Position numbers and translations under genes: made by a program. DNA of 64,000 nucleotides. It comes from Bigelowiella natans CCMP2755 (taxonomy: Eukaryota > Protista > Cercozoa). The notes below the pieces were generated by a model. That model saw nothing but the letters and a program-made list of their open reading frames with translations, was not told where the DNA came from and did no database searches. Positions 19,489-43,418 of this stretch are shown in pieces. Each line of letters opens with the position of its first letter. The stretch's first letter is position 1. The stretch lies in contig ADNK01002595.1 of NCBI GenBank assembly GCA_000320545.1, forward strand, positions 63,632 to 127,631, written 5' to 3'.

Positions 19489-22261
19489 ATGGAGGGCGTA
19501 TTAGGCGACTTGGAACCGCTCGAAAGGCTCAGCAAGCTGCTTAGCGAGTTTGAAGGTCTGAGCATTTTTTTCCTGCATCCCCCTTTTTGACAATACGGTA
19601 CACTCTATCTATCCAAGACGAAGTTAATTCACAATGCCATTAAGATAATGCCTCTGAGCAATGCAATGGTGATGGTGCAGGCTATTCAGTATTGCGATTC
19701 CACTGGAAGCGGCTTCTTGGCCGTATAAAGGGCATTAAAGTTCAGCCTAAGGACTATGAGAGCGTCCAGAATGAAATATATGGAGTCCTCGAGGAGGTTA
19801 GCAAAATGATCCGGATTCACAAAATCTAAAGTTACAACATGCCATGATTGAACAATGTTTTCGATTCTCTATCACGCCCCGTTCCTTTCTCCCCTCCACC
19901 CGATTTAACCCAGCACCGTCATCCACATTTGATATGCATGTCCGACACCCCCCCCCCCCCCCCACACACACATCTCTATATATGTGTGTGTGTGTTTACA
20001 CATATATGCTTTTATAAAATGTGCAGAGTATTCTAGTATGGAAGAAGTTGAAGGATCCAGATGAGGTTGTTAAACAGTCTATATGCACTATAACGAATGC
20101 ATATCCCTCGAGTGGTTATTGAGCCGATGGTGTAATGGCGCCATTGTTGGATATCTAGTGACTCTGTTTTTACAACTGCGTCGTAAATCATAATCCGTTC
20201 TATTTGTATTCCCTTCGACTTTTAATCGAAGTGGCTGCTACCCCAAGAACATACACCAAACTCACACAACCTTTAGCGGAAATGGGAAGGAGTACGGAGG
20301 GACAACATCCCGGATTCGAAGGTAGAGGGCGACGAGACAAATACAGACGGCAAGGATAATGAGCCTCATGCAGAGATAGGAAGGAATGAAGAGGTACAAA
20401 AGAATTAAAAATGCGTAAAGTTGAAAAGAAATCGACTTTTGCCAGTACATAACAAATTCAATTATTTATACTTCTCTACTTCAATACGCACTTGCTTTAG
20501 ATCGATCCAGTGTCAGATCAGGACAGGATGATAGTTGAAATTGAATACACGGAGTTGAAGGTGATTACACCTCGCAGTGATGGGGAGAGGAGCTGTAGCG
20601 TGGAGAGAAATATAATTTTCATGTATTCTAAGCTTTGATATTCGGATTGGCACCATTTCTAATGATCCTAACCATCATTGGGGTGTACCATTTTTTTATT
20701 GGTAGTTGCACAGGATACTATACACGAGGCCAGAAGAGTTTTTCAGCGTCGGAAAATTCCAGAGAAAAGTAATGCATTCTTCTACTTCAGAGCTTGTTAT
20801 CCCTCTTCCTCAATAGAGTCGTGACTGTTTTGCATCCACCTCAGGTTATCTCCGAGTTTCCTAATCCGGAGGCGAAGATGCCAATCTATGGAAGTCAGTA
20901 CTGTAACTGTTGTTTTGCACCGTTGCTGGGATATCTACTGCCAGTATGATTGAGCAGACCGATGATGCCAAATAATAGTACAACGATTGATAACTTGACC
21001 GACAACTCAGGTCGTAACAACTTTCATGCTGTGCTGTTCTGGGCAAGGCATTTCGGTGTGCGCGACATAGTGGATACAGACACCCTATCACTCAGTTTGC
21101 ACCTAGAGCTGCTCACCCAGACTAGCAGCGACAGCTTCTCGGCGGGGGAAGGCACATTCGAGGCCATTGCTGACAACAATAACCCTGTTGCTGTGGACGA
21201 ATGGCAAAGAAAGAAAAACCCTGTATCGGTTCATCCGTCTATATTAAAAAGGATGGTTGAGTCACTCCATCCAAAGGGCTTTCGAGTTAAGAACGCTGGA
21301 GTCAGGTTACCTTACAGGGCGGAGTTCGGTGTCGGCAAGATCCACATATCGCTTGCACAGTGGGTAGCGTTGACCAAGCTCTTCAATCCGAATCCGTAAG
21401 TCGCTGACCTTCTTCATCACAGTTTGATTACTTTGCGTATATTCTACATGTTATGATTGTAAACCCCCAACCCCCCCCCACTTCTACTTCTCCAATGATA
21501 CTGTCTAGCTACTGGAACATCGTTTCGATGGTGGAGTGTATGTCGGATGTAGTCGATATGAACGGCACGCGCTATCCATGGGTTTTTCTCTCCGGTATGA
21601 GTCAGAACGACCTCAACGCCATCCTGCGTAAGCATCGTTACTACTGTGCGGCCACACTCTCCTCAAGATGGTGATGATACCTTTTCTTTAAGATCAATAG
21701 AAGAGAGTCCCATTTATGTGAAGGGCATTTTCAGCAGAGGGGTTATTAGGTTTTTTTTATAAAAAAACACTCCCATTATGTGCGCTCAGCATTCCTACAA
21801 ACTCGTGTAGTAGCGTTAAAAAAACAAGATCAAGTTTCAACAACATCATCAATCCTAGTCGTCGGCATAATCACCATCACCATCATCAACAACAACAACA
21901 ACAACAGCACCATGAAACCACCAAACCGCTATCATATTTTTTTGTCACGATGCCTCTTCTGTCAATTATCGTTCTTATCAGTGCAAACATTGTGATACGG
22001 ACACCTCATGGAATTCAAAACACCAAAGGAGAGTCATCATCCACTGTTCTTGACCTGCGAGACACTGTCGATTTGAAGCAGGAAAGTGTTCGTCAGAAGT
22101 TAGTCGCGTCTCTATCCACCGTCCATCGTAAATTCCAAGAGTCTACTACCGACCTTAAAAAGTAAGTAGCGTGTTAAAGTCACCCCCCGCCCTCTCCCCC
22201 TCTTTTTCTCTCTCTCTTCACCAATCTTTAAACATGTGCACACACACAAAATGTGTGTGTG

Positions 22262-22303
<42 letters not shown>

Positions 22304-22805
22304 TTATTTATACAGCGTTCGCAAACATGTACTACGTGTGCTCTCATTACCTCCCTCTAATCAGATCAAATAGTATTACATTATTAACATCGAATTATTC
22401 TTTGCTGCGAAAGGGACAAAACCTTCTCGATTACGGACTTGATCCGGCAGCAAGAGATGCTTAAAGTTGACGGAATAGAATGGCAAAAACCGCTAAATGG
22501 CCTCGACGAGTGGCAAAAGCCTTCCTATAGACCGTCGTCGCGTGCCAACTCACTTCCCGATGAAATGTCAAGTAAGTACTAGGAAGGGAAAATCTTCAAA
22601 GAAATAAGAAGTCCCCTTATTGTGTCTGGTGTGCGCTTGTTGATAATTTTTGACGACATACATAGGCAGCGTAACGCAATTCCACATATCTCCTCGTAGC
22701 CAGCAACTTCTGAGGATAAATACCAATGGACGCCACAGTCGCCCCACCTCCAGCGGGTACACTGCAGTAGTTTAAGTCTGTGTGTCTGTGTGTGTGCATG
22801 TGCGC

Positions 22806-22836
<31 letters not shown>

Positions 22837-23585
22837 AAATTTTGAGATAACATCAAACATTTAATTAACGTTGGAACGTTGGTTTCGTGGTGTGTGTTGT
22901 GTGTGTGTTGTTTACGCACTTAAGGGGTGCCACCGAAAGCCGCCATCACTTCTTCAAGAGGGTTCCCAGCTCCAAGGTCGAGAGTGGAGATGAGACGCTT
23001 CTTGATAGCCTTGAAAACACAATTCTCGGGCTATTTTCGCGCTATCACCGTGTGGCCAACGAGTGTGAAGCTGCGGAGAATGAGCTGTCCGGGTGCCACG
23101 ATAATGCAGAACGTCTAGACCTCCACCTGAAGGCGCTTCGAAAGCGAAGGGACGCTACTGATAAGAGGGTCTCTCTCCCCCCCCTGTCCTAACCTATTAT
23201 TTCTCCTACCCTTAACACGTACAAACGTAGATCAACATTATCAGCTCCAACATAATAATACCGCAACTACGACTCCTCTTCTATCATCACTATTATTACG
23301 TGTTGTAGGTAACCGAGGCCTTTGGGCGGTTTTCGCAATCACAAGAAGAGCTCAGGATAGCGGAGGGACGCGTTGAAACCTCACGTGCGGCTGTTTTAGC
23401 CGCCGCAGAGCGAATTCAAGAAACCAAGATGAAGCGAACCAGAATTTCAAACGTATGTAGGAACAATTGCAGCATCAGTATCATTATATGACTACGCCGT
23501 GTCAATATTTGGACGCCAGAATCTGCTTCTTTATTCTACTGATATTATTATTCCTTCTAATCTCTTTCTTGATGCACCAAGCAAG

Positions 23586-23622
<37 letters not shown>

Positions 23623-24270
23623 TTTACATATGTAACATTCATAAGGTCACGGAGAAAATGCGGCAGGAGTTGGAGCAAGCGAGGCGTAGTGCACAAAGGG
23701 CACGTGCTGCTGCTGCGCGTGTACGTATTGTGAAGCGGCAAAGGTCTAATCTCACCATGCAGCTGGAGGAAATCAAAGTCCAATTAAAGAAGTACCGGGG
23801 GGAGAGCAAAATGGCGGTTGTACGGAGTAAAAGGGCACTTCCAGCTCAGAGCAGCGGCGTTGTATCACCCCCTTCACATGCATTTAATCAATCCCCAGCA
23901 GCTTCGCGCTTGCATTCAGGACGATCTCCACGGGAGAAACACTCTCCAGGAGTAAATAGCAACAATAGCCATCGCATGCAAGAACTTATTGAGATGCAGA
24001 GCATACAGGAAGGTACAGTGCATGCTGATAATGATCACAAAAATGTAATGATAGTAGTAACAATGGGAGGCGCTGGTGAATGTAAGAGATGGGATCTTGC
24101 AATGCTTCCTTCCGTTGATTCACATCCATTTCGTTTCCCTTAATGCCGTGGAACAAGTCCAAGGAAAGAGCAGACACACTCTCAATAGAGAGGGGAAGAG
24201 AGGGTGAATAGGGGGGCGAAAGGGGGGGGGTAAGTAATGCCCTTTCCATCGATATACACTGACACACACA

Positions 24271-24309
<39 letters not shown>

Positions 24310-24978
24310 TCACATACACTGAAACAGAGGACGAGATGACGCCTCGCGACTCTGATTTTGTCGCTTCCATCAAGAAAAATCTGAAAGATCACGAGCAAGT
24401 TCATGAAGAGGTGATGGAGAAAGCTCAGCAGGCAGAACGTGAATGGGCGGAGATTGTCAAATCAGCCAGGGCCTCGCCTCAGAACAAGAACCCCATTATC
24501 AGCAATCGTAATGAGGACGGTGATGACAATAAGCATGATCCAGAAGAAGAAGCAGCGACAGTGAGATCTCGTCTTCCTCCTGCATTGACGGTTCTCACGG
24601 ACGGAGAAGAGAGCAAGAAAGAAACAACAAGAACTGCTTTGACAGAAAAGAAAATAACGGTTAGCGAGGAAGATGGATTGGAGAATTCCGAGAATGACTC
24701 TGATGACCCTGTCGTCAGCTTCTATCTCGAGAAGGCAAAGGGCAATGAATCGTACGAATACTTCATCTTTTCTTCTCTCGCTCTTTCAAATTCTTGCTAA
24801 CGAAACGAAATCCCTCGAGCCCAATACCCAAATTTGCTATGCTTTCTATGATACCAGGTACATGCAGCAGCTCTCTCAGAGGCTTCATCGCACGGAGGCA
24901 AAGACCAAAGAGCAACAGAAGCGATTGGCTCAGGATGTTCAATCACTTGAGTCGAAGCTGAAAGAGCTCGAGTAGCTG

Positions 24979-25017
<39 letters not shown>

Positions 25018-25760
25018 TATGTGTGTGTGTGTTGTGTGCACCGTCATAATTAGCATCATGATATTGTAATCATCCCTTCCTCTTCAGGTCTAAATTGATG
25101 GATGATACGACTCAGCGAGACAGCGTCTCTTCGCTCAAGCAGAAAGCTCACGATGATGCTCGTGAATCTGCGGATGAGATAAAACGTATTCAGGTCTCCA
25201 TTGTAGAGCACCAGCTGCGCAAGAAGGCCAACGAAGAATCCCTAACCAAAGCAAAAAAGAAAACCAGGACCTTGCAAAGGGCGCGACAAGTAGCATTGCA
25301 ACTCTGCAACGAATGCGTGGATCAACTCTCTGTGACAACGGTGCGAGTATTTAATGACGCGTGTGGGGTACGTTCTTTCGCTAGCTTATCTACTACTGTC
25401 GGTTAGTTTTCTTACACAAAATAGAGAGAGAAATGGAGATGCAGGTTTCTGGTCGCTGCTTTTACTTCATATTATCATACTTCACTATTGTCTAATTATC
25501 CTACTATTCTATTCTTTTACATAATTTCCCCCTCAGGATTTCCAATCTCTCTCCTCCTCTTCCTCCTCCTCCCAAGACGTTGTGCGTGTATGCTCCGTGT
25601 TTTTATCGCTGATATCGCAGTTGCTGGCCTTGTCACCAGATAGTAGCTATAGACAATTTCTGCAAAAGTTTCTTACATACAAACGATGCGATCTTTCTCT
25701 CCTCCCACTCCTCACGCCAAAGAACATCGAACGGTAGTACTCATATTCAACACCTAATAC

Positions 25761-25800
<40 letters not shown>

Positions 25801-26643
25801 CCAAACGGTATTATACTAAGAAGAAACACCGTCTGCTATGGTGTAGCTACAACTTCTGCTTTCCGAGCTCAACTTTAGCTCACGAGGCGGCAACCAAAGC
25901 TCTTGATCACCGCTCTTGGCTGATATTTCTGGGGAAGCTCTCTCTCATCGATAATTGCTCTGTCTTCCATTGTCTGGAGAAGAGCTATTTTGGCGAACAG
26001 CGTAGAGACGGTGTTGATTTGTATGGCGACGGAGATGCAGATGATGATCATCCTGTAGTAAAGGTTAGGGAAATCAAGGACTCGCCTATCGTACGTGCAA
26101 TCTTTGAGTACTACCGGAAAATGAGTCGTCTGAAAAGAACAACAACTCGCAGTTGTTTATTTGAGTGGTAGAAGTGAGAAGGGGGTAGAGATGTGGAACT
26201 AATTATGCACCCCCCCCCCCTCCCCCTTCCCCTCTCTCTCCCCTCTCCCCCTTCTTCTTCCCGTAAAACACCGCCATTTCCTCTTTTTATCTCTCAGGAA
26301 AAAGTCGGCGACATCAGGCGGCAAGAAGTCGGTGTCAGGGGGAAGGGTGGGTTGGGTGTCAAAGCTGATTGGTATTAGTAGCAACCGTGAAACGGTACGA
26401 TCTGACCCTCACAAACAGCTCGAAATGAACCTACGGGAGCTTATTACTGTTCTCCTGTGTATGACGAGGGGCCTTGGCGAACGAAACATGTATTATTATT
26501 TGCTGCCCAGAGTGCTTGAGCAGCTTTCGATAGTCGTTTCTCCTGCTTCCCCCAACCAAAGTCTCTTCATGTGTGCTGGTGGTGGTGGTGCTAGATGGTG
26601 ATTGTGCGGGAAGTAAATGAATGCCACAACCCTGAGGGATATA

Positions 26644-26677
<34 letters not shown>

Positions 26678-28128
26678 GACACACACACACACACACACAC
26701 ACAGTCACACTCACACTACACATCCTTAATTCAAAGATATATATCGCACGTCCTGATGAGCGCTGCGTGTTGCGACGTTGGACAAGTGTTCCAGTGGATT
26801 TCGGAGATGGCCTCGGTGTCCAAGATCCTGCAGTATTGGGAAGAGTTTAAATGCCTCGTGTACGATGCGATGATGCATAGCAAAGAGCAGAAAGACATCA
26901 AAGAGCATGGAAATAATCAACAAAACAGTAGCACCACCGCCCCCATCAGTATCAGTAAGAAAAGCTCTAAAGCACCCAAAATCATCATAGACACCAAATC
27001 TGCAGAAGGTGACGATGATGGCAAGAACCAAAACGAAGGAAAAGAGAAGAAGGATGACATAACAAGCCCTACCGAAGCAGAAATAGCAGAAGGAAGGGGA
27101 GACAGAACTGAGAAGACTTCTTTGCGACAGGAGCTCTCTGATATCATCACAGGCAATGAGCACTACTTGTTCCAGCCAGGATATAAGCACAAGGTGCAAG
27201 TAGTATTAGTAGTAGTATTAGTAGTAGTAGCAGCAGCAGTAGTAGTGTGATTGGCGGATATGGTAGTAAGTAAGCAGTGGTACTTAGAGTATAGAGGAGA
27301 CGTGACAATAGAATAGTCCTAGTTGCAGCAGCATATCATCGTCCGTTATCAATGCACACTCGATAACGAGCTCTGAGATGAAATAATAATCTATACCGTA
27401 GGCCTTCTCATCTAACTTTATAAAGCGGAGGGGATTGAGCCAGGGCGATAAAGTTCAGATCCTTGAAGCTGTTTACGGAGAGCGCGAAAGTGGGTATCGT
27501 TGGCAGGCAGCGACGGTGTTAAGGAAGTGCATTGATGGAGAATCGCACCGTATAACACTGGAACTTCTGGACGAAAAGAAGCGGAGACATACAGTAATTG
27601 AATGTGAAGAAAGAGACATTTGGAATGTAGTCAGAATCCGTCCCAATTCTGTCATTGAAGCGACATACTACACCTCAGACTAAAGCAGCGAATTCATCAT
27701 CATCGTCATCATCGTCATCATCGTCATCATCGTTCAATCGCAAATTGTTCGTACCTTAAGTTAATTGCTCGTTTTTACGTATTATTCAGGTATCACCATT
27801 CGACTGCTTCAAGCTTGAAACAGTCACGGTTACCAAGCAGTCAAAGCTCAACCAATTCTCCGGATATAGAACGTCAGATACAACCACAGAAGGGAGGGGG
27901 AGAGGAGGAAGTGTTCGGAGCTCCGATACCGAGCTTCAGCAGCAGCAGCCGTTTGAGGCTAGTTTTAAAGAAGATAAGTCGGGGCTTCATGGGTGGATTG
28001 CAAACATCGTACGATACCGTAAGCTTCGAGCCTCTTCGGTTATGCTGATGCCTCGATCTACCACCACCTTGTCACACCAACGGGAAATACGACGAGCAGT
28101 GTTGACAGGAGAGGTAATAGTAGTAGTA

Positions 28129-28159
<31 letters not shown>

Positions 28160-29547
28160 CTGCGATCATACTGGTAGTAGTAGTAGTAGGTCACACACTT
28201 GAGAGGCAGTTCTTTAATCATCACTGCTACTACCTGTTGATTCAGGATATGCCACGAATTAAGCGCCCAGGCGAGCATTCTGAGCTGATGCACGAGTTGG
28301 AGCTTCATAGATCTTGGATCCAATATGACGAGTTCAGAACAAATAAGGTATTTGGTGGGGTGTGCTCCTGGGTAGACAAGACAAAGAAACAATTGTACAC
28401 AAAAGCCATATACATCAACCTAGTCAACAATTCTGATCTCCACGCTCATTCCCCCCCCCCCCCCCCAACCACAGGTCGAGTGGCCATGGCCAACGCTCCT
28501 ACATTTATTTATCGACAATGCCGGATCTCGACAGAATTTACGCGATCCTAGCGAGATTGTGAGGAGGCTTCTCACATGGGACTCAGGGTGCGATCATGTC
28601 TCCACTTCGTTGTTTTATGTGGTGATGAGTTCATTGAAAGAAGATATCCTTTCATCAAATTCGAGGGTTTTGGCCGGAAGGAAAGTGGTTGCTAGAAGCA
28701 AGGCGCGAAGCAAAATTCTCAAGACCGTCGATCGTGAGAGACGTATACCAATGATGCTTGCACTGAAGAACCACAATAAGGTGCGAGGAGGAGGAGGAGG
28801 AGGAGAGTTACTCTATCCCCCTTGCTCCCTTCCTTAATTAAAAACATTTACCAGTCAGATGATTAAGCATATATTCTTCCTAGGTACAAATGGTATCTTA
28901 AGAAGTGCTTTGTGCTATTGTTATAGTCTCGACTATCGTGTACCTGGTTCTGATCTTTGTTTTTCTTAGGTTTTATTCCAGATATTATTCGAGGAATCGC
29001 ATGAATCGCTCATGCATCACCGAGACAACACCGGGACTTCACTCTTGCACTATTTGGTGCGCTCACCGCTTTTCTCCGCAGAGGAGATATTCGCACATGA
29101 TCTCAGTAGACCTCTTGACATAGAGGTACAATTCATATTAAGGCCAGAGCTCGTAAGAATGGCAATTGTAGTTGCCATCATTACCCCCAATGTTACACTG
29201 CGAATATCTATAAATAATGACATGACGCCGTGCGTGTGGATATCATCAACAACAGGTCAAAGAGCCAAATGCAGAGCTTAAGATCTGGCTGGAATTGAGT
29301 ATAAATCGCAACTACGTCATCGTTGATGCATCGTCCGCAGCTAAGAACTCCGGGATAATCCTCGGCTCTAAGCTGACGTATGTGAATAACCGAACGCCGT
29401 CGCTTGCTCCATTGCACGACACAAAACATGCACCGGCAACGATGATGCTACTGCTACCGACGGAGAAGAAGGAGTACCCAATCAAGATCAGCCTGATTTT
29501 ACCAGACGGGTTGTTGTTGAGATATGCACATCGTTATTGATATATTA

Positions 29548-29581
<34 letters not shown>

Positions 29582-29698: not shown

Positions 29699-29734
<36 letters not shown>

Positions 29735-32700: not shown

Positions 32701-34177
32701 ACACACACACACACACACACACGCACGCACGCACAAACACGCACATACTCACATTTTAGGCATGACGTCTGCACACGGTGCCCCACGCCAGCAGAGTGAA
32801 ATGGCGCTCAATATCGACATGCAGCATAGCGAAAACGTGAATGTGAGTAATCTTACATCTCACATCAACGAAATGGCATATAGTCTGAGAAACCTTAGAG
32901 AACACCGATGAAAGAATCATAAAATACTCCCAATTAAAAAAGTTGTCCTCATCATTATGATTCCCGCCGTGATGATGATGGTGACGATGATGATTATTTA
33001 TAATTCTTATTAGGTGCCGATGCATTTGTCGGAGTATCACATGCGGCTGATGTTCAGTACAACTGTGCCTGAATACGTCACCAACCGCACAGCCTTGCAC
33101 TATGCAGCCTCTTCGCTGCATACTGATTCAGGTAAAAGACGATGGAGGAGGGGGAACGAATTCTCTCGCTAGTTTTGTATAGCAATGATTTGATTTTAGA
33201 ATGTTTGCGTGTAATTATATACACTCTTTCGTTTGTACGCATAGGGGTTGGAAACGTCTCCTGTGAGATTACAACAATGTTATTACGACGACACGTGAAG
33301 ATCGGGTAGGTTTTGAATGATGACCGAAGAACACATTTCGCAATGGCGAGAAGATATCGAGTGATGAGGGCGATCCCACGGATGATATCCAAGATAGTTG
33401 TACGACATGCATGTCATGTTAACGATTGATTATGCAGTTTCTACATCATTAAGAAACATACACGTATGTATCTCTAAGTTTGAATATCAAATATGTAGGT
33501 GTTTCGATGAGTTTCAATTATCAGAGCTACACTACGCTGTTCTAAGTACGTGGCAGCACACACAATTCATCATTTCATTATAAAAAGAATTGCACAAATG
33601 CCCCTCAATTTTGCTACCATAAATTCTCTCATCAATCATACACACTATGATTCTTCAACGTCGCCATGTAATCCTCCTCTTCCTCCATCTTCTTTGTCTT
33701 TCGGCCTTCTCTTATTTTTACCCACTTCCATCATGTGCGCATCATTCAGGCAAGCATCTGCAAACGATCGACGAATTGACTAATTACACCGATCTCAACA
33801 TAGCAACTGGGGCCATTAAGAATGTTAGGCAGGTGTGAATGCATCAGCATGCTATTTGTGTAGCATCATCTCCCGATGGATGTCCAAAGTTCCTCCTGCT
33901 TTTACTTTTCATTTCTTGCTGTTAACCATAGTAGTGATGATTGACTTTCGCTCTTAATTTTTACCCCTTCTTTCATCATCATGTTTCTTTGCCAATTTCA
34001 CTCGTCATTGCTTTGTTCATTTCCCAACTTTTATGACGCATATAGGCTGGAGGGAAAAACACAAAGATTTGGAGCTCAAGAGTCCTAGAGTCAGATGAAG
34101 AACAATAAAATCTACATTCATTTTGTTTATGTATTTATTTTCGACCCAATCTTGTTGAATCAATTTACAATTGGATC

Positions 34178-34226
<49 letters not shown>

Positions 34227-34346
34227 GAATTAGGAGTACGATTGATGCTGCGGGGATGATGCTGCTCCCTTATCCTCCAGAGTGTGTGAAAGTTGTCACA
34301 GGCAAGAAAGGTAGTATCGACAGTGATGAGTATTAATACTCTCTAT

Positions 34347-34392
<46 letters not shown>

Positions 34393-34808
34393 TCATGCAC
34401 CGCATATATCGTCTTCAATAGCGATCATCATGATCATTGTGATGGCAGGTAAGTATATCAAAGTGGAGGTTCCGATTCACTCGCGTCAGTGCCGTTTTCA
34501 ACACGGAGGAGAAACTGGTCTGCATTCTCCTGATTCTTTGCGATGTCCACATCATCTTTTCACATCTCCTTATCATCTTCAAAAATAGTAAGATTCTCAT
34601 TGGTGAAATCATGATTTAGGGCTACATCTCGCTGCGGTGAATGGCCTTGTAGATGTGGCAGCAATGCTGCTAAAGAAAGGAGCAAAGAAGGATATTACAG
34701 ATCGCAGGGGAATCACGCCCTTAGGTGGCCAAAACACTACCAAATAATGTCCCATTGCCTAAAGCATATATTTGTGTGCGTGTGCGACTCGCCATTGTTG
34801 TTTATGTT

Positions 34809-34849
<41 letters not shown>

Positions 34850-36788
34850 AACCGTATGATGTTAATCCTCTGTGCACACACGTTAATATAAATACAGGCT
34901 CTGCGATGATGCGGTTCAAAGATATTAAGATGTTTTACGACGTCAATCGGCTCGATAAAAAATATGGTGACAAACACAATCACATCGTTTAATGTCTGGG
35001 AGAGAACAACGTATTTGGGCTTTTACACAATGTTGCCTTGCTATATTTTGAAAGATCATACATAAATATAAATTGTAAGCTTGAAATCACAAGACGAAGC
35101 TACTCGTCTATAAAGGAAAATGAATTTTCTGCCAATTGTATCAGCGCAAAAAGAGTCGCTCACAGATATCGTCCGCCAATCCCGGTTTCACAAATATACA
35201 TCATATTAATTTATGCATCTACATTTTCCTACCTAACAAATGTGCATCTGGGTGTCTTTCTTTTGAACGGGATCTTATTGCTTCTGGTCGCATTGCAAGT
35301 GTTCAATTTGAATAGATTGGTGGTTGATGCGTGCACTCACGACGGAAAATCATAATTATTGAATTCATAACTCAGGACACCTATTCGGCAAGATATGTAC
35401 GTCTCTTCTTCCCGTGCTCCTTTCAAAATGCCAGCTACAATGACAAATGGAGAAGCGATTCGTTTACAACAACATATATAATTTAGACATAGAATGTGTG
35501 CTCTCCTTAGTTGTTAAAATGTTCTGTTCTCCCTTATACCACAGTTTCCGAGCACTTCACGAGCTTAGGAACGATCTAGATGCAATAATACAGTAAAGCA
35601 GCATGATAGGAATTAACTAGTGGGAGAGTGCGATGTTATCCACCCTTAACTTAGAGCATTTGTGAGAAAATGGAAAAAGAAGAAAACAATTATTAATTGT
35701 TCTTATTTTATACGTGGCATACCGCATAATACCCTGCGACAACAATGATTAATAGGCTACTCATTCGAGAGGGGGCAGACTTAGAGCTTGCACAGAGGTT
35801 CAGTGGCACATCATTTGAGGTTCTTCCTGCTATTCTTTGTCTGAATTAGTAAAGAGAGAGAGAGAGGGAGGGGGGGGGGAGGGGGAGGGGGGCACGAGAA
35901 GAAATAGAAGAATGGTAAATAGAACCACTCAAAAGGATGATCTCACTGCACAAAAGATGATGCTGCTTCTCTCTCTCCTCCTCCTCCTCCTCCTCCTCTT
36001 CCTAAATCTGGTAGGAAATCTATGATATTCCTGGCAAGTTTCAGAGCATTGTAGAGCAAGAGAAGCTGTTCGCCAAGGAGGCATGCAAGTCAAAGGACGC
36101 ACGACAGGTGGTGTAACAACCTTACGCAAATAATAGTAACAACAACAATTACACCACACCTTCACACCAAGGTTCCATTCCAAGTCTTAGTTGTCACCAT
36201 GAGAAACCTTTCTCCCTTGAATACTTCTTCTAACTACTAGCATATGCTCTACTTTACCCTGCTGCTGCTGCCACGTGATGATATTGATATCCGTTGATTC
36301 TTCTCAGGTGCGGAGTATAGAGGAGAGCGTGAAGAACCTATTCGATAACCGCATGAATCAGATCGTCTGTGACGCGGTAATAGTAGTAGTAGTAGAAGTA
36401 GAAGTAGTAGTATAGCGATGAAACTAGTCTTATTATTCTGCTACGCACTTGCACCACACAACGCTTATTCCCACTCATATTAACAGTGTTGATGCACAGA
36501 ATAACCACGTCATCGTCGAGCCCCAGCTGCTTTTCAACCACTCTCGTCGTGATGAAACAAGTAGCAAGCGTCTGTTAAATACTCATGCAATGGTGATCAG
36601 GTGTATCGTATGGAAGTGCGCGGAGCACGTGTCTCGAGCTTTCTCTTCTACGCGGTGTTTCTTTCGCTTCTCTCACTGCTCGTCGTTCAGCTGGCAACCC
36701 AAGACCGAAGAACATCCTTTTGGTTTCATAACGCTATGGTAACTAGTAATAGAATTAGTAGTAGTCGCAAGAAACATAATACATATAT

Positions 36789-36971: not shown

Positions 36972-37019
<48 letters not shown>

Positions 37020-37231
37020 GTGCAAACACTTGTGGACGATGAGATTCCGTATGATGTTTCGCGGATAAAAAGGAACTTTAGGGAGATTGATTCGATCGAT
37101 GAATTCTGGTATATTCAGATAAAGGAAATCTGACTGCCGCACTTTGTTTTTCTCTTCGCATTCTAGTCTCCATCCCCTATCATGTTTAAATCATGTTTAA
37201 ATACGGTATGTAATTGTCTGCGCTTGATATT

Positions 37232-37265
<34 letters not shown>

Positions 37266-37422
37266 TGTGAGCTCCTCTATTTGGATATCTACAGGATGTG
37301 GTTGGAAGGGCCTTTTCTAGACCAATTCTATCCTCAAGTCGAGCCCGTATATGTAGCAGACAACGGCACACAGAACGGACTCAGAGGGTTTGACAGCTTG
37401 TACAAAAGGATCCCCACTCTTT

Positions 37423-37459
<37 letters not shown>

Positions 37460-37578
37460 TGTGTGTGTGTGTGTGTGTGTGTTTTATTTCTTTAACATCT
37501 TAGTGAATAATCTTACTGATTGATTGCATCTGATCATCAGATATGTTGGCGGGCAGTCAAGGATCGTTGGAGTTCCAA

Positions 37579-37622
<44 letters not shown>

Positions 37623-38043
37623 CTCTATGACGTAGGAGGGGGCACTCACAATGCTAATTTGTAGTAGTAGTAGCAGTAGTAGTAGTAGTAATACCTGTAC
37701 GCATTCTCACGCACATAGATATCATCACTTCATGTGAATGTTATCAGGATACGGCAGCTGCGATCGATGCGAGAATCATGTGATTTACCTGATCAGGTCA
37801 TCATTTTCGTGCTATGGTTATGGCACTACTCATACAGAAAGAAGCAAACTAGATGGATGTGTTCTTCTGATTGTCTCCTTATATCCTCAGGTAGCGATGG
37901 AGGGTGAGGTTTGCTTCTCAGAGGCAGGCTGCATTATTCCCAAGATACGATGCACAGAAGGTCAAAACGCTTAAATGGTGTTAGAAGGAAGGAAGGAGGA
38001 AAGGAGAGAGAATAACACTTTGATACGATTTCTGACTCTCTTT

Positions 38044-38085
<42 letters not shown>

Positions 38086-38500
38086 CTACCATATATGCTT
38101 TCGCACACCCAAAAGCAAACATACACAAATTCCATCTTGAGAGCTTCATCATCTGCTCCTTACCCCCTCCCCTCCTCCCCAATCGTCGCCACCTCTCCCT
38201 CCTCCTTATTCCACAGGCATCGAGCAGGGCACTCAAGTATTTGGCGGTGTTGAATATGCCTATCAAACTCCCAACGACCTAGATTCTGGCGTGTCTCTTA
38301 CATGGGGCCAATTCAGTCGCTGGTAGTCTATAGCATTCATACCTTCTTCCTCACACGTTCACGTACTACTGACAAATCAACAGGTATCCTGTATCTGGAT
38401 ATGTGCAAAACTTCCCATCCCCATGGTATAACTCGAGCTATTCCAATGCCACTGCCCTTATTGCAGCCCTCAAAGCATCGGATTGGGTAGTATTAGTTAG

Positions 38501-38566
<66 letters not shown>

Positions 38567-39416
38567 TGTGAGTACGTTAATTGATTGACACATGACGTTA
38601 TCATCGCTATATTTTATTGATGATTGTCGCAACCCATAGATTGATCATCTGACACGCGTGGTAAACGTGGAGTTCAGTCTGATAAATACGCACACGAACG
38701 ATTACATGTCTGGGATTATGATGGTCGAGTATCCCCTCGTTGGCGGGGCAATCACAAGCTTTGACTTCAACGTAAAAATAAGTGCTTCCTCTGTTTTTAC
38801 TTGTGCTACAAATACGAATGAATGAGATCCGTCTCCCACATACAAAAGAAAGCGGCAGTTAAACATATCATCGATGATACTGCAATGGTAACTTTTGGTA
38901 CTTGCTATCTCTTCTGTTCTTAGGTCGGTAGATTTGTGCACTACCAAAACGGCAATGGCCTTATTGCTCTAGAAATAGTCGTTTCAATAGGATTCTTCTG
39001 GTATTCTTATAGACATTGTATACGCACATTCATCTTTCAAATCCTTTTATGATTGATGTTTCTCTTCTTCTGTCTTTTGCTGCTATCTTATGTATGTCAT
39101 CCTCGCAGTTATTTGATCAGCGAGCTGGAAGCTTTCTCCCTTCTAGGTTTCAGACAAACGATGAAATACCATGCATGCATGTTGCCAGATGAGGGAGTAT
39201 TGTCTCACAATGATGGACGATACGAATCTTCCGGCAAATTGCTATGCTAATCAGGAACGTGCAAGTACCTCTCTACAATGTCGCATCTTTTGATGTTCTT
39301 AATGCTGGTTATCTGGATGCTTCTCATCATCATGTACATCTACATCATCAACTACGAGAACAGCGTGGTAAGTCAGATGCGACGAAGTTGATGACAAGAG
39401 AGCGAGCGAGAGAGAG

Positions 39417-39455
<39 letters not shown>

Positions 39456-39996
39456 AGGAAGAAGCACATCGATACGATTAGGGAAGTAGTATGAAACACA
39501 TTCACGTACACATACAGAAGACATAATACTAACAACGTCAATCGACATTTGCTGCTGCTGCTGCTGCTGCTGCTGCTCCTTCCACTACTACACCACTACT
39601 ACTACTACTACTACGGTTAATTATAGGATTGGACGGCAAGAGACGAATACGTTCCCATTATCCGCCTTGCACTCGGTGTGCGTGCGACGACGTATCTCCT
39701 TTCATTTCTGATTGCTTTTGCGTGGTGGAACCTCCTCAACTATCTGACGATCATAAAGGTGTAGATTACTTGATAATAATGATAAGAGACCGAATGAGAA
39801 GAATATCTGACCTCCACAAAAACGGATCATCAAATTGTTTATGTGTGTGTGTGTGTGTGTGTGTTTGTAGGCGTTTGCAGAGTTGCTGGTCATGATCGAG
39901 TTCATGTTACTGGCACTTTATCCTTTGTTATTGCTGCTCCTCTTTGTTTTGTGCTCCTTTGCATTCGCCATGTATGTGGCATTCGGGTACTACGTT

Positions 39997-40034
<38 letters not shown>

Positions 40035-40058
40035 AAAGAGGGAGGAGGGAACGAGAGC

Positions 40059-40112
<54 letters not shown>

Positions 40113-40569
40113 AGATCATGACGTTTGTAAGACAATGAAGTCCACAGAAATTAGAAGGGAAAAAAACACAGAGGGAGGAAAAATGTCTGATAGAATGATG
40201 GTGGGGATACCGTATATCTTCTCTGTCTTTGTTTGTTTCTACTTGATAAGTTACCAAGACATCGACAGTCAGACCTTTTGGGTCTCTCTCGCAACACGGG
40301 TAAGAGATATAGCAGCAGAGAACAAGAGGAATCCAATTATGCTATATGCATGTGAGCATGTATGTACGCATAAAATATAAATATTGTTAGTAGCACGCTG
40401 CTTTGTGTGTGTGAGAGAGAAATAATAATAATGACATAGTAGAAGCACACACATCTCACCTAGCTAATGCAGCACCCCAACGATGAAGATGAAGATAAAA
40501 ATAAATGCAAAGAAACTCTTTGCGAGACTTTTGTGATCTTTCACTCTTCCCCTTCCTCTTTCCTCTCCT

Positions 40570-40642
<73 letters not shown>

Positions 40643-41067
40643 TATGTAACAGGTGGTAGAGACGTTTGGCGGCGTAGACTACGAGCGAATAGCTGGATAT
40701 GACCGCGTAATAGGTATCATGCACTACCCAACAATTATAGAGACTCTTACGCCTGAATACGAATGATGTGTCAATATGAAAATATAAATTCTCCATTAAA
40801 ACAACCAAAGGAACGTTCTGGTCGGTGGCTTTTGTGATATTCCTCGGTGTTTTGATCTTAAACCTCATAATCGCTGTTCTCACTCACCAGTACGAGAGCG
40901 CAAGGTCCATCAACATCCTCATCATCACAATACTATTACTGATGATGATGATGCACTGATTTACTGATATTGTTACGATTCCTTAGGGAGCAGGTTGGGA
41001 AGAGGCACTGGGCGCACTATCAGTATAAATCTATTATGGTACGTTAAGTTAGTTGTTGTCGTAAATA

Positions 41068-41100
<33 letters not shown>

Positions 41101-41280
41101 CACACACACAAACACACATACACACATACACATACACAAACACACAACAAACACACACATAAAGAAATTATGTATTTCTACCAAATATTTAAATATTCAG
41201 TCACTAATCTTTATTCAACATTCTTCGCCCATCATCATCATCATCATCATCAATATTATCATCATCATCCCATAATCATC

Positions 41281-41325
<45 letters not shown>

Positions 41326-42179
41326 CCCCCCCCAGTTTCACTGGATAGTAAAAAAGGAAAGGAAGGATTATATCAATACCATGCTATCACGCCTTTGCTG
41401 CAGGTTGTGCATGAAGTGTGTGAGAACAATAAACCATCGCATCACCGTTGGAACGCAGATCATAATTTATGATGTGTGCAGTACTTCGTCCATATTGATT
41501 TTTGTCTAAATCGTGTGATATCGATTTCCAGTAAAAAGGGTGATGATGGTAATGGTGGGAATGCTGACAGACGTAATAACGTCACTGATGAATCTGATGC
41601 GGAATTTGGCTGCTTGGCGAGGTCGGATTATCACTACCCAAGCCCCTCTAACTTGTGATGATAGACCAACAAGAAGTGCTAAGACAATTCCATATGCATC
41701 CTCCTCCTCCTCCTCCTCCTCCTCCTCCTCCTTTTTTCATTAGGTGTAAGAGGGGGTGGAAGTCGTGTATATCATGCCTGGAGGAGACGATAAGTGCGCT
41801 GATAAATGGGGTAATAAGCGTGGTTGTGTCTGATGAGAGGGGGAGGGGGGAGAAATGACGTTCACAAGAGGATATATCGGTATGAAAGTATTTCTATCAT
41901 CGGCAATTTCGTCGTCTTTATTACAATACTTACACTGATATAATGAATATCTTAAATGATACAGTTTTAAGTGACAGCGGCATTGTGCAAAACCTTCTAT
42001 TCTCCTATTTTGTTGATGTGGTTGTATCCTTGGTGGCCGACTGATGATCCTGTATGTACAAATTCTGCTATTATCATAGGTGCGCAAGATCTTCACTAAA
42101 TGCCACAATTGCTGGATTATTCCTGCCTCTAAACAGTAAGTATCAAATTTATGGATGATGTTCCATGAGTATGTGTGTA

Positions 42180-42230
<51 letters not shown>

Positions 42231-43418
42231 CTATTTATATTGATTCATTTGTATCTGACATGGGCTTTGATTCAGTATTATTTCCTTCTGTACTTTTCCC
42301 CCATTTTGCTGCACTTGGCATGATTGCATGTCGGTACACACCCGCATTTGCGCCGCTTTGTTCTCATGCTATTGACAGGTACATGCAGCACGTCATGGAT
42401 CTTGAAGTGAAGGCGAAACTTTCGAAATTGAAGAAGTCAGTGAGTAGATCAAAGATGACGATAATGATAATGATGAAAATAGTGATAGGGTGGTGATAAC
42501 GATGGCAAAGTGAGAGCATGGAGATTGTAGAGGGTGGTGGTAGTTGTGGTTGTGGTGGTGGGCGGCGTCATCATCACCATCCAGTAGATGATTGATGTAT
42601 GTAGCACCTACAAATATTAATGTAAGTCGTCTATGATTTATTTAAAGACACGTGCGGGTGGAGCAAGGAGTTGCGCTGTCAATGCATAGATTGCCTTCGA
42701 TGAGGTCTGAAGTAGTATCAGAATATGTATCAGCAGTAATGAGTCATTGTAGTTGTTTCTACTGGAGCAAAGGCCAACACTGCCACTTCAATAATCGCAT
42801 ACGAAATTTAGACACACAGTTTGTCGCCTCAATGTGATCTCGATAATTGCTTAATTAGTACGGTTCCTGAATATGAAAATACATGCTGCGGCTGCAAGAA
42901 ATCGTGCTACCAGTTTTGGGAAGTAAGCATTCATTCTCCAATGCATTTTTTCAAAACAATTCGTGGTCTCGCTTGATACCCATTCCAAGTGACTTCTGTT
43001 TACTTGAACATGTACCGTATCAGTGGTGCAAGCACTTGTGTCGGTGTTGCGGAGGGTACGTTCTTCATCTATCTTTGACTACTTCACAACAAGTGTGAAT
43101 AATGTAAAAACTGAGATATATCTGATTTTGTTGTGCTGCATGCTCCGCGGTACCCTTGCTTTGTGTGGCGCGCACGCATACATACACAGCAACTCTAATA
43201 AAGCTGATGATATCTTCGTCCATGACCATCTCGACGAAATGTGCCCGCGTAAGTGTTGACCATAGAAATAATTAAGATATTGAATTTTTGAAACGATGAT
43301 TAATGATAATGATGAAGATGTAAATACGTGATTGATATGCTGATATTTATGTTTTTTCTATTTCTCAATGAATCTTTTTGTATTTTTGCAGTCTACGATG
43401 ATGAGGAAGCTGTCGTAG
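19489..43418 (+). CDS. Very large multi-exon gene: helical bundle/Cbl-TKB-like (EF + SH2-like) module, coiled coils, ankyrin repeats, C-terminal polycystin-2 (TRPP)-like cation channel; could instead be two or more genes
   Basis: Same-strand exons splice in frame wherever I checked (21977-26580 and 34620-36738). I did not verify every junction. The 3' end is uncertain (42496 or 43418). Confidence 0.55.
21020..22470 (+). other. Cbl-TKB-like EF-hand-like + SH2-like domain exons
   Basis: HAVLFWARHFGVRDIV and HISLAQWVALTKLFNP resemble Cbl DAAEFWRKAFGEKTIV and YISVFEFDIFTRLFQP. They are followed by YPWVFLSGMSQNDLNAIL...IVIR...KTFSITDLIRQ, an SH2-like pattern (W-F-G-S, FLVR-like Arg, F-S-x-x-L-I). 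Recognised by eye only. Confidence 0.55.
28480..35810 (+). other. Ankyrin-repeat exons of the large gene
   Basis: VDRERRIPMMLAL, RDNTGTSLLHYLV, NRTALHYAA, LSELHYAVL, LHLAAVNGLVDVAAMLLKKGAKKDITDRRGITPL, LLIREGADL. Confidence 0.8.
36600..40905 (+). other. Polycystin-2/PKD2-type channel domain exons
   Basis: S1 FLFYAVFLSLLSLLVV is followed by the polycystin (TOP) domain motifs WLEGPFLD, RIVGVPR-IRQLR...SC and LKASDWID-HLTRVVNVEFSL. Then S5 FVLCSFAFAMYVAFG, pore FGGVDY and S6 FVIFLGVLILNLIIAVLTHQY. Confidence 0.85.

What the first reader, a model, noticed from the sequence alone, without database searches (positions are those of the whole stretch)
19489..43418. Giant candidate SH2-like/ankyrin/polycystin-2 channel: a phosphotyrosine-reader-type module fused to a TRPP channel
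Seen: an apparently continuous spliced frame runs from an N-terminal helical region through Cbl-like EF/SH2-like motifs, long coiled coils, a Tudor/SH3-like beta segment (~27435-27680) and many ankyrin repeats into a full PKD2-type channel. The ankyrin-to-channel junction can be spliced in frame (...DKKY-GHLFGKIC-TFRALHELRNDLDAII-QLLIREGADLELAQRFSGTSFE-EIYDIPGK...). Known: TRPP/PKD2 channels normally lack ankyrins, which are typical of TRPA/N/C/V, and the Cbl TKB module normally sits on RING E3 ligases. Inference: a novel ligand- or phosphorylation-gated cation channel architecture.
Basis: partly seen in the sequence, partly recalled or inferred. Interest (0 to 1): 0.8.

Follow-up and report, generated by a model that had tools for sequence, protein, structure and literature searches.

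The report
Giant ankyrin–polycystin-2 channel gene
The alga Bigelowiella natans has a 24-kb, very intron-rich gene for a polycystin-2-type ion channel whose huge inner arm carries coiled coils and ankyrin repeats, a combination I found undescribed for this channel family; the proposed phosphotyrosine-reading (Cbl/SH2) module found no support.

Summary
The locus is real and mostly as described. The window is Bigelowiella natans. A public intron-free transcript contig (L009, product P0011) matches the window at 98-100% as 48 exons with 47 GT-AG introns, from 31,876 to 43,791.

For 19.5-31.9 kb there is no transcript. However, a 3,131-aa ortholog from an uncultured eukaryote, encoded as one uninterrupted 9.4-kb ORF, maps in order onto the + strand from 21.0 to 41.0 kb. 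I put one gene at about 0.8.

The public JGI model (813 aa) is truncated and skips S1.

Cbl-TKB, EF, SH2, Tudor and SH3 got no support from Pfam, PDB sequence searches or genome-wide six-frame scans. The one fold attempt failed (pLDDT 37), so a divergent fold is not excluded.

Verdict: a new variant of a known kind, a TRPP channel with ankyrin repeats and a giant N-terminus of unknown fold. Phosphorylation gating is unsupported.

The parts
19489..19554 (+). Predicted first coding exon: ATG at 19489 (MEGVLGDLEPLERLSKLLSEFE), GT donor at 19555. It joins in phase to 'GYSVLRFHWKRLL...' from about 19679.
   Evidence: Read directly from the sequence. Weak resemblance to the ortholog's N-terminus. 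No transcript evidence.
20950..22579 (+). The conserved motifs are LFWARHFGV and W-x-x-LSG ... LRD.
   Evidence: Matches ortholog P0004 residues 152-439 in order. Single copy in the genome. No Pfam or PDB match. Fold attempt gave pLDDT 37.
22869..25403 (+). Exons encoding a long, charged, helical (coiled-coil-like) region.
   Evidence: Weak in-order hits to P0004 residues 467-858. The ortholog region gives weak crescentin-rod and tropomyosin matches.
25639..27199 (+). Conserved helical domain of unknown family (ortholog residues 918-1137).
   Evidence: tblastn HSPs at 35-40% identity. In-frame GT-AG junction 26489/26737, exactly where the ortholog is contiguous.
27402..27629 (+).
   Evidence: Open in phase 0. 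Acceptor scores 6.1 and donor 4.2 on matrices built from the 47 proven introns. Weak match to P0004 residues 1168-1211. No Pfam hit.
27790..28347 (+). Two predicted exons (27790-28113 and 28246-28347) encoding a Ser/Thr/Arg-rich linker and 'LELHRSWIQY'. The intron between them removes the (GTN)n microsatellite.
   Evidence: Strong splice sites (acceptors 8.0 and 6.6; donors 7.9 and 6.4). All in phase 0 and open. A 108-codon open frame has chance probability about 0.001.
28475..31875 (+). Exons of a degenerate ankyrin-like region (WPWPTLLHLF, TSLLHYLV, MIERGANL). It includes a PDZ-like motif at 29316-29399.
   Evidence: In-order hits to P0004 residues 1365-1926, up to 62% identity. GT-AG junction 28780/28970. 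The same 'GNSILHYMV' motif occurs upstream of the channel in a third organism. No Pfam hits on the exons tested between 28.4 and 31.0 kb.
31876..35819 (+). mRNA-proven exons of the ankyrin-repeat region. The canonical repeat is at 34620-34724. The micro-exons are 35145-35184 (40 nt) and 35376-35396 (21 nt).
   Evidence: L009 cDNA alignment at 98-100% identity with GT-AG introns. Pfam Ank and Ank_2. AlphaFold2 plus Foldseek give ankyrin-repeat proteins.
36015..36376 (+). Two exons encoding the conserved pre-S1 linker helices (FQSIVEQEK...VKNLFDNRMNQIVCDA).
   Evidence: Present in the mRNA. Conserved in P0004 and P0006. pLDDT 78-93 in the model.
36601..36738 (+). S1 transmembrane exon (VYRMEVRGARVSSFLFYAVFLSLLSLLVVQLATQDRR...). 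The public JGI model omits it.
   Evidence: Present in the mRNA. Aligns with PKD2 S1. P0001 replaces it with unrelated sequence.
37020..38771 (+). Exons of the extracellular TOP / polycystin domain between S1 and S2.
   Evidence: Pfam Polycystin_dom 85.3 bits on P0011. Exon-level hits. All PDB hits for the exon at 38640-38822 are PKD2 or PKD2L1.
38924..40904 (+). Exons for S2-S6. The pore loop is at about 40650-40680 (VETFGGVDY) and S6 at 40811-40904.
   Evidence: Present in the mRNA. PKD_channel 35 bits. Residue-level alignment with human PKD2. Family alignment.
40987..43586 (+). Exons of the cytoplasmic C-terminal tail, with a post-S6 'RHWAHYQY' motif and a Cys-rich cluster. Stop codon TGA at 43584-43586.
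   Evidence: Present in the mRNA. Conserved with P0004.
43587..43791 (+). 3' untranslated region, up to the end of the transcript contig.
   Evidence: L009 bases 3597-3801.

Best explanation
One gene (about 19,489-43,791, + strand) encodes a subunit of roughly 3,100 aa of a tetrameric TRPP (polycystin-2-like) cation channel. I estimate 85-95 exons.

SHOWN. The C-terminal ~1,200 aa come from one mRNA. They contain an interrupted ankyrin-repeat region, a conserved helical pre-S1 linker, S1, the extracellular TOP/polycystin domain, S2-S6 with a pore loop, and a Cys-rich tail.

STRONGLY INFERRED. The ~1,900 aa encoded between 19.5 and 31.9 kb belong to the same polypeptide. They comprise an N-terminal globular region of unknown fold, a long coiled-coil-like region, a helical domain, a small beta-rich segment and degenerate ankyrin-like repeats. 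The reason is that a relative encodes the whole arrangement as one uninterrupted ORF, in the same order.

INFERRED MECHANISM. The channel conducts cations through a PKD2-like pore whose filter reads F-G-G-x-D instead of L-G-D. The giant cytoplasmic arm is not a phosphotyrosine reader. It more likely acts as an assembly and tethering scaffold: the coiled coil for oligomerisation or reach, the ankyrin repeats for binding the cytoskeleton or partner proteins. It would position the channel, for example at the flagellum or cell cortex, or pass force to the pre-S1 linker, as the ankyrin array does in NOMPC.

I give about 0.8 to the single-gene architecture, about 0.99 to ankyrins and channel being one protein, and about 0.35 to the tether/scaffold mechanism specifically.
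For: Genome identity: P0001 is JGI Bigna1 model 80484.

mRNA: the L009 contig is intron-free and its ORF is open at the 5' end. It aligns as 48 exons at 98-100% identity, with 47 of 47 GT-AG introns of 61-353 nt, across 31,876-43,791.

Domains on the mRNA product: Ank 43.5, Ank_2 44, Polycystin_dom 85.3 and PKD_channel 35 bits. Human PKD2 aligns S1-S6 at E 7.8e-36.

Ortholog: P0004 (3,131 aa) is a single 9,396-bp ORF on gene-dense genomic or metagenomic contigs from five assemblies. It gives 34 + strand HSPs in order, from 21,019 to 41,041, and 24 more sensitive ones over 20.6-32.2 kb.

Junctions: in-frame GT-AG junctions occur exactly where the ortholog is contiguous, at 26489/26737 and 28780/28970. 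A phase-0 path with strong splice sites crosses 27.4-28.8 kb.

Family: the pre-S1 linker is conserved in three organisms. A third organism has the ankyrin-like 'GNSILHYMV' region upstream of its ANK-PKD2 ORF.

Fold: the ankyrin region gives ankyrin-repeat proteins as the top Foldseek matches, probability 1.0.
Against: No transcript covers 19.5-31.9 kb. Both metagenome-contig scans were blank, and the second failed its positive control, so neither is informative.

The frame of the Tudor-like exon runs into a stop at 27,681. The donor I propose before it (27,630) scores only 4.2, below the median of 5.8 for proven donors. A gene split near 27.7-28.2 kb therefore cannot be excluded.

The public gene model is only 813 aa, though the mRNA shows it to be wrong.

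The pore filter differs from PKD2's L-G-D, so ion selectivity is unknown.

The tether/scaffold function is inferred purely by analogy. Coiled-coil evidence is weak (E 0.008-0.2). The ankyrin array is interrupted by low-confidence insertions rather than forming one continuous spring.
Confidence: 0.75

Rival explanations
1. Two adjacent genes in B. natans. An upstream gene (about 19.5-27.7 kb) would encode a coiled-coil protein ending at the stop at 27,681. A separate ankyrin-PKD2 channel gene would start near 28.25 kb, for example at the Met in 'MPRIKRPGEHSELMHELELHRSW'. This would be a gene fission relative to the single-ORF ortholog.
For: The frame of the 27,402-27,680 segment ends in a stop, with only a modest donor before it. 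An in-frame ATG lies in the 28,246-28,347 exon. No mRNA spans this point.
Against: The ortholog is continuous here. A phase-0 path uses strong sites (acceptors 8.0, 6.6, 7.4; donors 7.9, 6.4). It passes through a 108-codon open exon that would be open by chance about 1 time in 1,000. The gaps between the proposed exons (127-189 nt) are ordinary intron sizes and leave no room for a terminator plus promoter.
Confidence: 0.15
2. The N-terminal region (21.0-22.5 kb) is a Cbl-TKB-like four-helix/EF/SH2 phosphotyrosine reader, and 27.4-27.7 kb is a Tudor/SH3 domain. This would make the channel gated or recruited by tyrosine phosphorylation or a ligand.
For: By eye, the two species share a 'W-x-x-L-S-G ... 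(about 30 residues) ... h-h-L-R-D' pattern followed by helices, loosely like the SH2 'W-[YF]-x-G ... FLVRES' pattern (sequences). The low-confidence model has helix, three strands, then helix in that region. The genome does encode at least one true SH2 domain. A tyrosine-kinase-like gene was noted just downstream (note s1-755338, not checked here).
Against: No Cbl_N, Cbl_N2, Cbl_N3, SH2, EF-hand, Tudor or SH3 hit on the window's exons at E<=1, on the ortholog's sub-ranges at E<=5, or on the paralog's N-terminal exons at E<=10. PDB sequence searches give no SH2 or Cbl chain. Six-frame SH2 and Cbl_N3 scans of the genome do not hit this locus. The structure model is unusable at pLDDT 37.
Confidence: 0.07
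3. The public annotation is right: an 813-aa stand-alone PKD2-like channel starting near 35.95 kb, with unrelated genes or no genes upstream.
For: JGI model Bigna1 80484 (P0001).
Against: The mRNA contig continues upstream through 19 more exons, with its frame still open. The model's first 18 residues (MMLLLSLLLL...) map to no mRNA exon and resemble a repeat-derived open frame at about 35.95 kb. The model skips the S1 helix, and near the pore it keeps a segment that the mRNA splices out.
Confidence: 0.02

Closest known systems
Polycystin-2 / TRPP2 (human PKD2, PKD2L1)
   Same: Six-helix channel with a large extracellular TOP/polycystin domain between S1 and S2. Alignable from S1 to S6 (E 7.8e-36). 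Pfam Polycystin_dom and PKD_channel both above cutoff.
   Different: About 2,300 aa of cytoplasmic N-terminus, with ankyrin repeats and coiled-coil-like sequence, where PKD2 has a short N-terminus. The pore loop reads F-G-G-x-D rather than L-G-D. No EF-hand detected in the C-terminal tail; there is a Cys-rich tail instead.
NOMPC / TRPN1 (and TRPA, TRPC, TRPV: group-1 TRPs with ankyrin repeats)
   Same: A TRP-superfamily channel with N-terminal ankyrin repeats connected to S1 through a helical linker. NOMPC's ankyrin array tethers the channel to microtubules and conveys force (cited in PMC10543168). NOMPC appears among the PDB ankyrin hits.
   Different: The transmembrane core here is group-2 (TRPP) with a TOP domain, not group-1. 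The ankyrin repeats are few, degenerate and interrupted by insertions, not 29 contiguous repeats. There are additional coiled-coil and unknown domains.
Oomycete PKDRR proteins (PKD2-type channels fused to RyR domains)
   Same: A precedent that protist PKD2-type channels acquire extra cytoplasmic domains by domain shuffling (PMC7399828).
   Different: The fused domains there are RyR 'R' domains. That paper reports no ankyrin repeats on PKD channels. It concerns a different lineage, the stramenopiles.
P0004 (3,131 aa, uncultured eukaryote: NCBI GCA_977009605.1, ENA ERZ23491473) and P0006 (at least 1,189 aa, Logan SRR28720659)
   Same: True family members. P0004 has the same order of conserved blocks from the N-terminal 'LFW-x-R-x-FGV' motif to the channel tail. 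P0006 shares the ankyrins, pre-S1 linker and channel.
   Different: P0004 has no introns in the gene, whereas B. natans has at least 47 in the last third alone. P0006's contig ends before any N-terminal region, so its full length is unknown.
Cbl tyrosine-kinase-binding (TKB) module / SH2 domains
   Same: Only a motif-level resemblance seen by eye (W..LSG ... LRD).
   Different: No detectable sequence similarity by any search. No RING domain. The fold is untested.

Membership tests
TRPP / polycystin-2 channel family | Extracellular TOP (polycystin) domain between S1 and S2 | tested here: met
   Pfam PF20519 scores 85.3 bits on the mRNA product, against a cutoff of 23.6. All 16 PDB hits for the exon at 38640-38822 are PKD2 or PKD2L1, at the same position.
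TRPP / polycystin-2 channel family | Six-helix PKD_channel core alignable with solved PKD2 | tested here: met
   PF08016 scores 35 bits against a cutoff of 22.4. phmmer against PKD2 structures gives E 7.8e-36 over residues 485-974, covering S1 to S6.
TRPP / polycystin-2 channel family | Selectivity filter L-G-D, as in human PKD2 and PKD2L1 | tested here: not met
   The filter aligns to F-G-G (then V-D) in B. natans, F-D-G (I-D) in P0004 and F-G-G (A-D) in P0006. An acidic residue is kept two positions later. This is a variant, not grounds for excluding it from the family.
TRPP / polycystin-2 channel family | C-terminal EF-hand and coiled coil, as in metazoan PKD2 | tested here: not met
   No EF-hand family among the Pfam hits on P0011 or P0004. 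The tail is Cys-rich instead.
Ankyrin-repeat proteins | Repeats matching the Ank profile and the helix-turn-helix stack fold | tested here: met
   PF00023 scores 43.5 bits and PF12796 44 bits. The single exon scores 23.4 against 21.1. The top-ranked Foldseek hits are ankyrin-repeat or designed-repeat proteins, probability 1.0. Only part of the region is confidently folded.
Cbl TKB module | Cbl_N four-helix bundle + Cbl_N2 EF-hand + Cbl_N3 SH2-like domain, detectable by profile | tested here: not met
   No hit on the window's exons at E<=1 or on ortholog residues 101-460 at E<=5. A genome-wide six-frame scan with PF02762 found nothing, though that control also rang nowhere. No Cbl chain in the PDB search.
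Cbl TKB module | TKB fold by structure comparison | tested here: inconclusive
   Single-sequence AlphaFold2 of ortholog residues 140-450 gave pLDDT 37 and pTM 0.21, so no fold search was run on it.
SH2 domain | Match to the SH2 profile, including the FLVRES arginine | tested here: not met
   A six-frame PF00017 scan finds a true SH2 at C1637 (45.5 bits) but nothing in this window. No SH2 hit at E<=5 on the ortholog or at E<=10 on the paralog's exons. The conserved 'LRD' is only suggestive.
Tudor / SH3-like beta-barrel | Profile match or barrel fold for 27402-27680 | tested here: inconclusive
   No Pfam hit at E<=1 on the exon or at E<=5 on ortholog residues 1181-1290.

The most novel reading that the evidence does not exclude
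The conserved N-terminal ~1,300 aa would be a previously unrecognised regulatory module. It comprises the 'LFW-x-R-x-FGV' globular region, the coiled coil, the helical domain and the small beta segment, and no profile or PDB sequence matches any of it. It might include a highly divergent SH2-like phospho-reader. Such a module would couple a signalling input directly to gating of a TRPP channel, giving the first group-2 TRP with a built-in cytoplasmic sensor arm.
Probability: 0.1. Interest if true: 0.8.

Novelty: new variant of a known kind. Interest (0 to 1): 0.55.

Why it matters
TRP channels are usually split into two groups. Group 1 often carries N-terminal ankyrin repeats. Group 2 (TRPP and TRPML) has an extracellular TOP-type domain and no ankyrins (reviews read). 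This gene has both features in one mRNA-verified protein, and relatives exist in at least two other protists. Ankyrin arms are therefore not confined to group-1 TRPs.

It offers a natural test of whether an ankyrin/coiled-coil arm can tether or gate a polycystin-type pore. That is relevant to how polycystins sense stimuli, which is still debated.

It also corrects a badly truncated public gene model. And it provides a striking pair for intron evolution: at least 47 introns in the B. natans gene against none in the ortholog.

Tried and rejected
1. Exon-by-exon Pfam on 50 stop-free pieces. Only the Polycystin_dom, Ion_trans and Ank hits were relevant to this gene. The other weak hits looked like chance or low-complexity matches.

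2. Two metagenome-contig scans for upstream transcripts. Both were blank. The second should have returned L009 and did not, so the collection lacks or withholds that sample and the blanks mean nothing.

3. Word-indexed protein searches. They found only self or the truncated model, or were swamped by generic ankyrin proteins. They even missed P0006, so they say little about distribution.

4. Single-sequence AlphaFold2 of the N-terminal region. pLDDT was 37, so no fold search was run on it.

5. ESM Atlas. 

6. A two-species profile of the N-terminal region (alignment A2). MAFFT stacked the exon fragments, so I dropped the planned profile search against the PDB.

7. The seven 'PKD_channel' hits elsewhere in the genome. 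They are voltage-gated four-domain-type channels, not polycystins.

8. The paralog on C1141. Only its channel exons are statistically similar to this gene. The upstream resemblances are motif-level only, and its N-terminal exons give no SH2 hit.

10. Searches used single exons by reference, the public mRNA product P0011 with its contig L009, and the ortholog's natural ORF. Only short local junction peptides were inspected in scripts.

Full report
WHAT THE WINDOW IS. The region is eukaryotic, with short exons and many microsatellites. The genome is 91 Mb in 3,736 contigs, and the window is C1142:63632-127631. A search of 1.84 billion representative proteins with the TOP-domain exon (38640-38822) returned a 100% identical hit, P0001. 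Its source names are EukProt 'Bigelowiella_natans' and JGI 'Bigna1/80484/fgenesh1_pg.71_'. The window is therefore Bigelowiella natans, a chlorarachniophyte alga.

THE CHANNEL IS REAL. Single exons already point to polycystin-2. Pfam Polycystin_dom scores E 8e-4 and 5e-3 on two exons, and Ion_trans scores on the S6 exon. All 16 PDB hits for one exon are PKD2 or PKD2L1, at the same place in the TOP domain. On the mRNA product P0011, Polycystin_dom scores 85.3 bits and PKD_channel 35 bits, both above the curated cutoffs. Human polycystin-2 aligns from S1 to beyond S6 at E 7.8e-36. The pore loop differs from the human one. PKD2's L-G-D aligns to F-G-G followed by V-D here, to F-D-G-I-D in the ortholog, and to F-G-G-A-D in a third relative.

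THE ANKYRIN-TO-CHANNEL LINK IS PROVEN BY AN mRNA. The cluster of P0001 holds a second member, P0011 (1,197 aa). It is encoded on a 3,801-bp contig from JGI sample 3300017192 (L009). The ORF occupies bases 3-3596 and is open at the 5' end.
- Aligned to the window, the contig splits into 48 exons at 98-100% identity, from 31,876 to 43,791, and every base of the contig is accounted for.
- All 47 implied introns are GT-AG and 61-353 nt long. Only a spliced mRNA gives that pattern.
- The mRNA runs through the ankyrin exons, including the canonical repeat at 34,620-34,724. That exon alone passes Pfam's Ank cutoff.
- It continues through the small exons 34,898-34,966, 35,145-35,184, 35,376-35,396, 35,545-35,592, 35,756-35,819, 36,015-36,107 and 36,308-36,376, and into the S1 exon at 36,601-36,738.
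The 21-nt micro-exon was therefore read in the wrong frame; the mRNA reads ...DKKY|AQKESLTDIVRQSR|TPIRQDI|FRALHELRNDLDAIIQ|LLIREGADLELAQRFSGTSFE|EIYDIPGK....
- The coding sequence ends at TGA 43,584-43,586, after one more intron, not at 43,418.

THE PUBLIC MODEL IS WRONG. P0001 (813 aa) starts with a sequence (MMLLLSLLLL...) that maps to no mRNA exon and resembles a repeat-derived open frame at about 35.95 kb. It replaces the S1 helix with unrelated sequence. Before the pore it keeps a segment that the mRNA splices out.

THE UPSTREAM 12 KB. No transcript could be found for it. Both metagenome-contig scans came back empty, including one with an exon that overlaps L009 and should have retrieved it, so those blanks are uninformative. 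The evidence is therefore comparative.
- The representative search also returned P0004, 3,131 aa, with the TOP segment at residues 2598-2642.
- P0004 is encoded as a single uninterrupted 9,396-bp ORF on gene-dense contigs with genes on both strands. Near-identical copies occur in five assemblies (NCBI GCA_977009605.1, ENA ERZ23491473, Logan). One 78-kb metagenome scaffold carries 13 intron-free genes in 29.5 kb. In that organism the giant protein needs no splicing inference.
- P0004 maps to the window's + strand as 34 HSPs in order, from 21,019 (residue 152) to 41,041 (residue 2886). A more sensitive search adds blocks through the coiled-coil and linker regions.
- Where the ortholog is contiguous across two window blocks, in-frame GT-AG introns exist at exactly the expected places: 26,489/26,737 and 28,780/28,970.
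They reveal a path with every junction in phase 0: 27,402-27,629 | 27,790-28,113 | 28,246-28,347 | 28,475-28,780. Acceptors score 8.0, 6.6 and 7.4 and donors 4.2, 7.9 and 6.4. Each exon is open, and the 108-codon exon would be open by chance about once in 1,000.
- The weakest point is the 4.2-scoring donor just before the in-frame stop at 27,681. I keep about 0.15 for a two-gene arrangement.

WHAT THE N-TERMINAL ARM IS, AND IS NOT.
- On the ortholog's uninterrupted sequence, Pfam finds only ankyrin repeats (about residues 1903-1972 and 2192-2240) plus the channel domains.
- Residues ~460-1000 give weak crescentin-rod and tropomyosin matches (E 0.008-0.2), consistent with coiled coil.
- Nothing matches Cbl_N, Cbl_N2, Cbl_N3, SH2, EF-hand, Tudor, SH3 or PDZ at E<=5, or on the window's own exons at E<=1.
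- A six-frame SH2 scan of the genome finds a genuine SH2 at C1637 (45.5 bits) but none here. A Cbl_N3 scan finds nothing anywhere.
- The N-terminal exon is single-copy in the genome, and no other protein of 1,722-5,479 aa shares the N-terminal 2,180 residues at the word-index level.
- Single-sequence AlphaFold2 of ortholog residues 140-450 failed (pLDDT 37), so the fold question is open.
- By eye there is a conserved W-x-x-LSG ... LRD pattern that probably prompted the SH2 idea. I rate a true SH2-like fold at under 10%.

THE ANKYRIN REGION. I folded the first 480 residues of the mRNA product with a three-sequence alignment. The model was partly confident (pLDDT 57.9, pTM 0.61), with good blocks at 180-230, 300-345 and 380-480 separated by low-confidence insertions. 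The top-ranked Foldseek matches listed are ankyrin-repeat or designed-repeat proteins at probability 1.0. 'Many ankyrin repeats' is therefore fair, but they are degenerate and interrupted, and only a few pass Pfam.

FAMILY AND DISTRIBUTION.
- P0006 (1,189 aa, from a 37%-GC organism) has several ankyrin repeats (Ank_2 81.6 bits), the same pre-S1 linker motif, and the channel.
- On P0006's contig, an upstream ORF in another frame matches ortholog residues 1435-1501, including 'GNSILHYMV'. Its gene therefore extends further 5' as well.
- B. natans has one paralogous polycystin-type gene, at C1141 around 171.3-174.2 kb.
- By eye, canonical ankyrin repeats and similar short motifs lie upstream of that paralog. 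Only its channel exons are statistically similar to this gene, and its N-terminal exons give no SH2 hit.
- An earlier scan note (s1-417294) describes an 'SH2 + ankyrin + polycystin-2' gene on another contig. It may be this paralog.
- The seven other 'PKD_channel' hits in the genome are voltage-gated four-domain-type channels.

LITERATURE. The texts I could read treat ankyrin repeats as a feature of TRPA, TRPN and other group-1 channels, and they describe TRPP and TRPML as an ancient separate group. None describes an ankyrin-bearing TRPP. Oomycete PKDRR proteins show that protist PKD2-type channels can acquire other cytoplasmic domains (PMC7399828). I therefore class this as a new variant of a known kind.

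MECHANISM.
- Shown: a PKD2-type pore-forming subunit carrying ankyrin repeats, on one mRNA.
- Inferred: tetramer formation and cation conduction, by homology with PKD2.
- Inferred: the arm works as an assembly and tethering scaffold rather than a phospho-reader, by analogy with NOMPC's ankyrin tether and with Chlamydomonas PKD2, which is anchored to the axoneme (PMC10543168). I give this specific mechanism about 0.35.

STEPS LEFT OUT. Exons were searched one by one by reference, and the natural public sequences (P0011/L009 and P0004/L008) stood in for the whole. The profile search from alignment A2 was dropped because the alignment was unsound. The protein atlas could not be used: the first call exceeded its length limit, and the five retries found the machine busy.

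Noticed in passing
window 35950-43586: The public JGI model Bigna1 80484 (813 aa) is truncated. It begins with a sequence that maps to no mRNA exon, omits the S1 transmembrane helix, and keeps a segment before the pore helix that the mRNA splices out.
   Followed up: yes
window 31876-43791 compared with L008:3001-12396: Extreme contrast in intron content. There are 47 GT-AG introns (61-353 nt; mean exon about 80 nt; micro-exons of 21 and 40 nt) in the last third of the B. natans gene. The orthologous gene in an uncultured compact-genome eukaryote (58% GC) has none.
   Followed up: partly
G000:C1141:160500-175000 (L014, L015): A second polycystin-2-type gene in B. natans. By eye, canonical ankyrin repeats (about 167.5-168.2 kb) and short motifs resembling this gene's (LFWWRFFGV, VSFLHYLIQ, YRWTILRNAVQYG) lie upstream of it. 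Only the channel exons are statistically similar.
   Followed up: partly
G000:C1637:41960-42151 (- strand): A genuine SH2 domain (PF00017, 45.5 bits) in a 246-aa open frame. This shows that the genome does encode SH2 domains, though not at this locus.
   Followed up: no
G000:C3708:157482-163610, C1679, C3151, C3424, C2350, C1167 (L001-L007): Long intron-free open frames (up to 1,681 aa) encoding voltage-gated four-domain-type cation channels (Ion_trans up to 373 bits; GPHH). This is unusual in such an intron-rich genome.
   Followed up: partly
window 40987-43586: The C-terminal tail has a Cys-rich cluster (CCG..CKKSCYQFWEWCKHLCRCCG) and a post-S6 'RHWAHYQY' motif, both conserved with the ortholog. 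They could be sites of S-acylation or metal binding, or a TRP-box-like helix. The precomputed Pfam list for the product includes YVC1_C.
   Followed up: no
window 29316-29399: A PDZ-like motif (SAAKNSGIILGSKLTYVNNRTP; the ortholog has RYARLQGVSPGSRIISINGRSP) sits inside the degenerate ankyrin-like region. Pfam gives no hit.
   Followed up: no
window 9156-11200 (+ strand): Ankyrin-like motifs (ETPLHSVLRG; LLLLSSGNKHAVEMLLESNSDPSARN) suggest another ankyrin-repeat gene upstream of this one.
   Followed up: no
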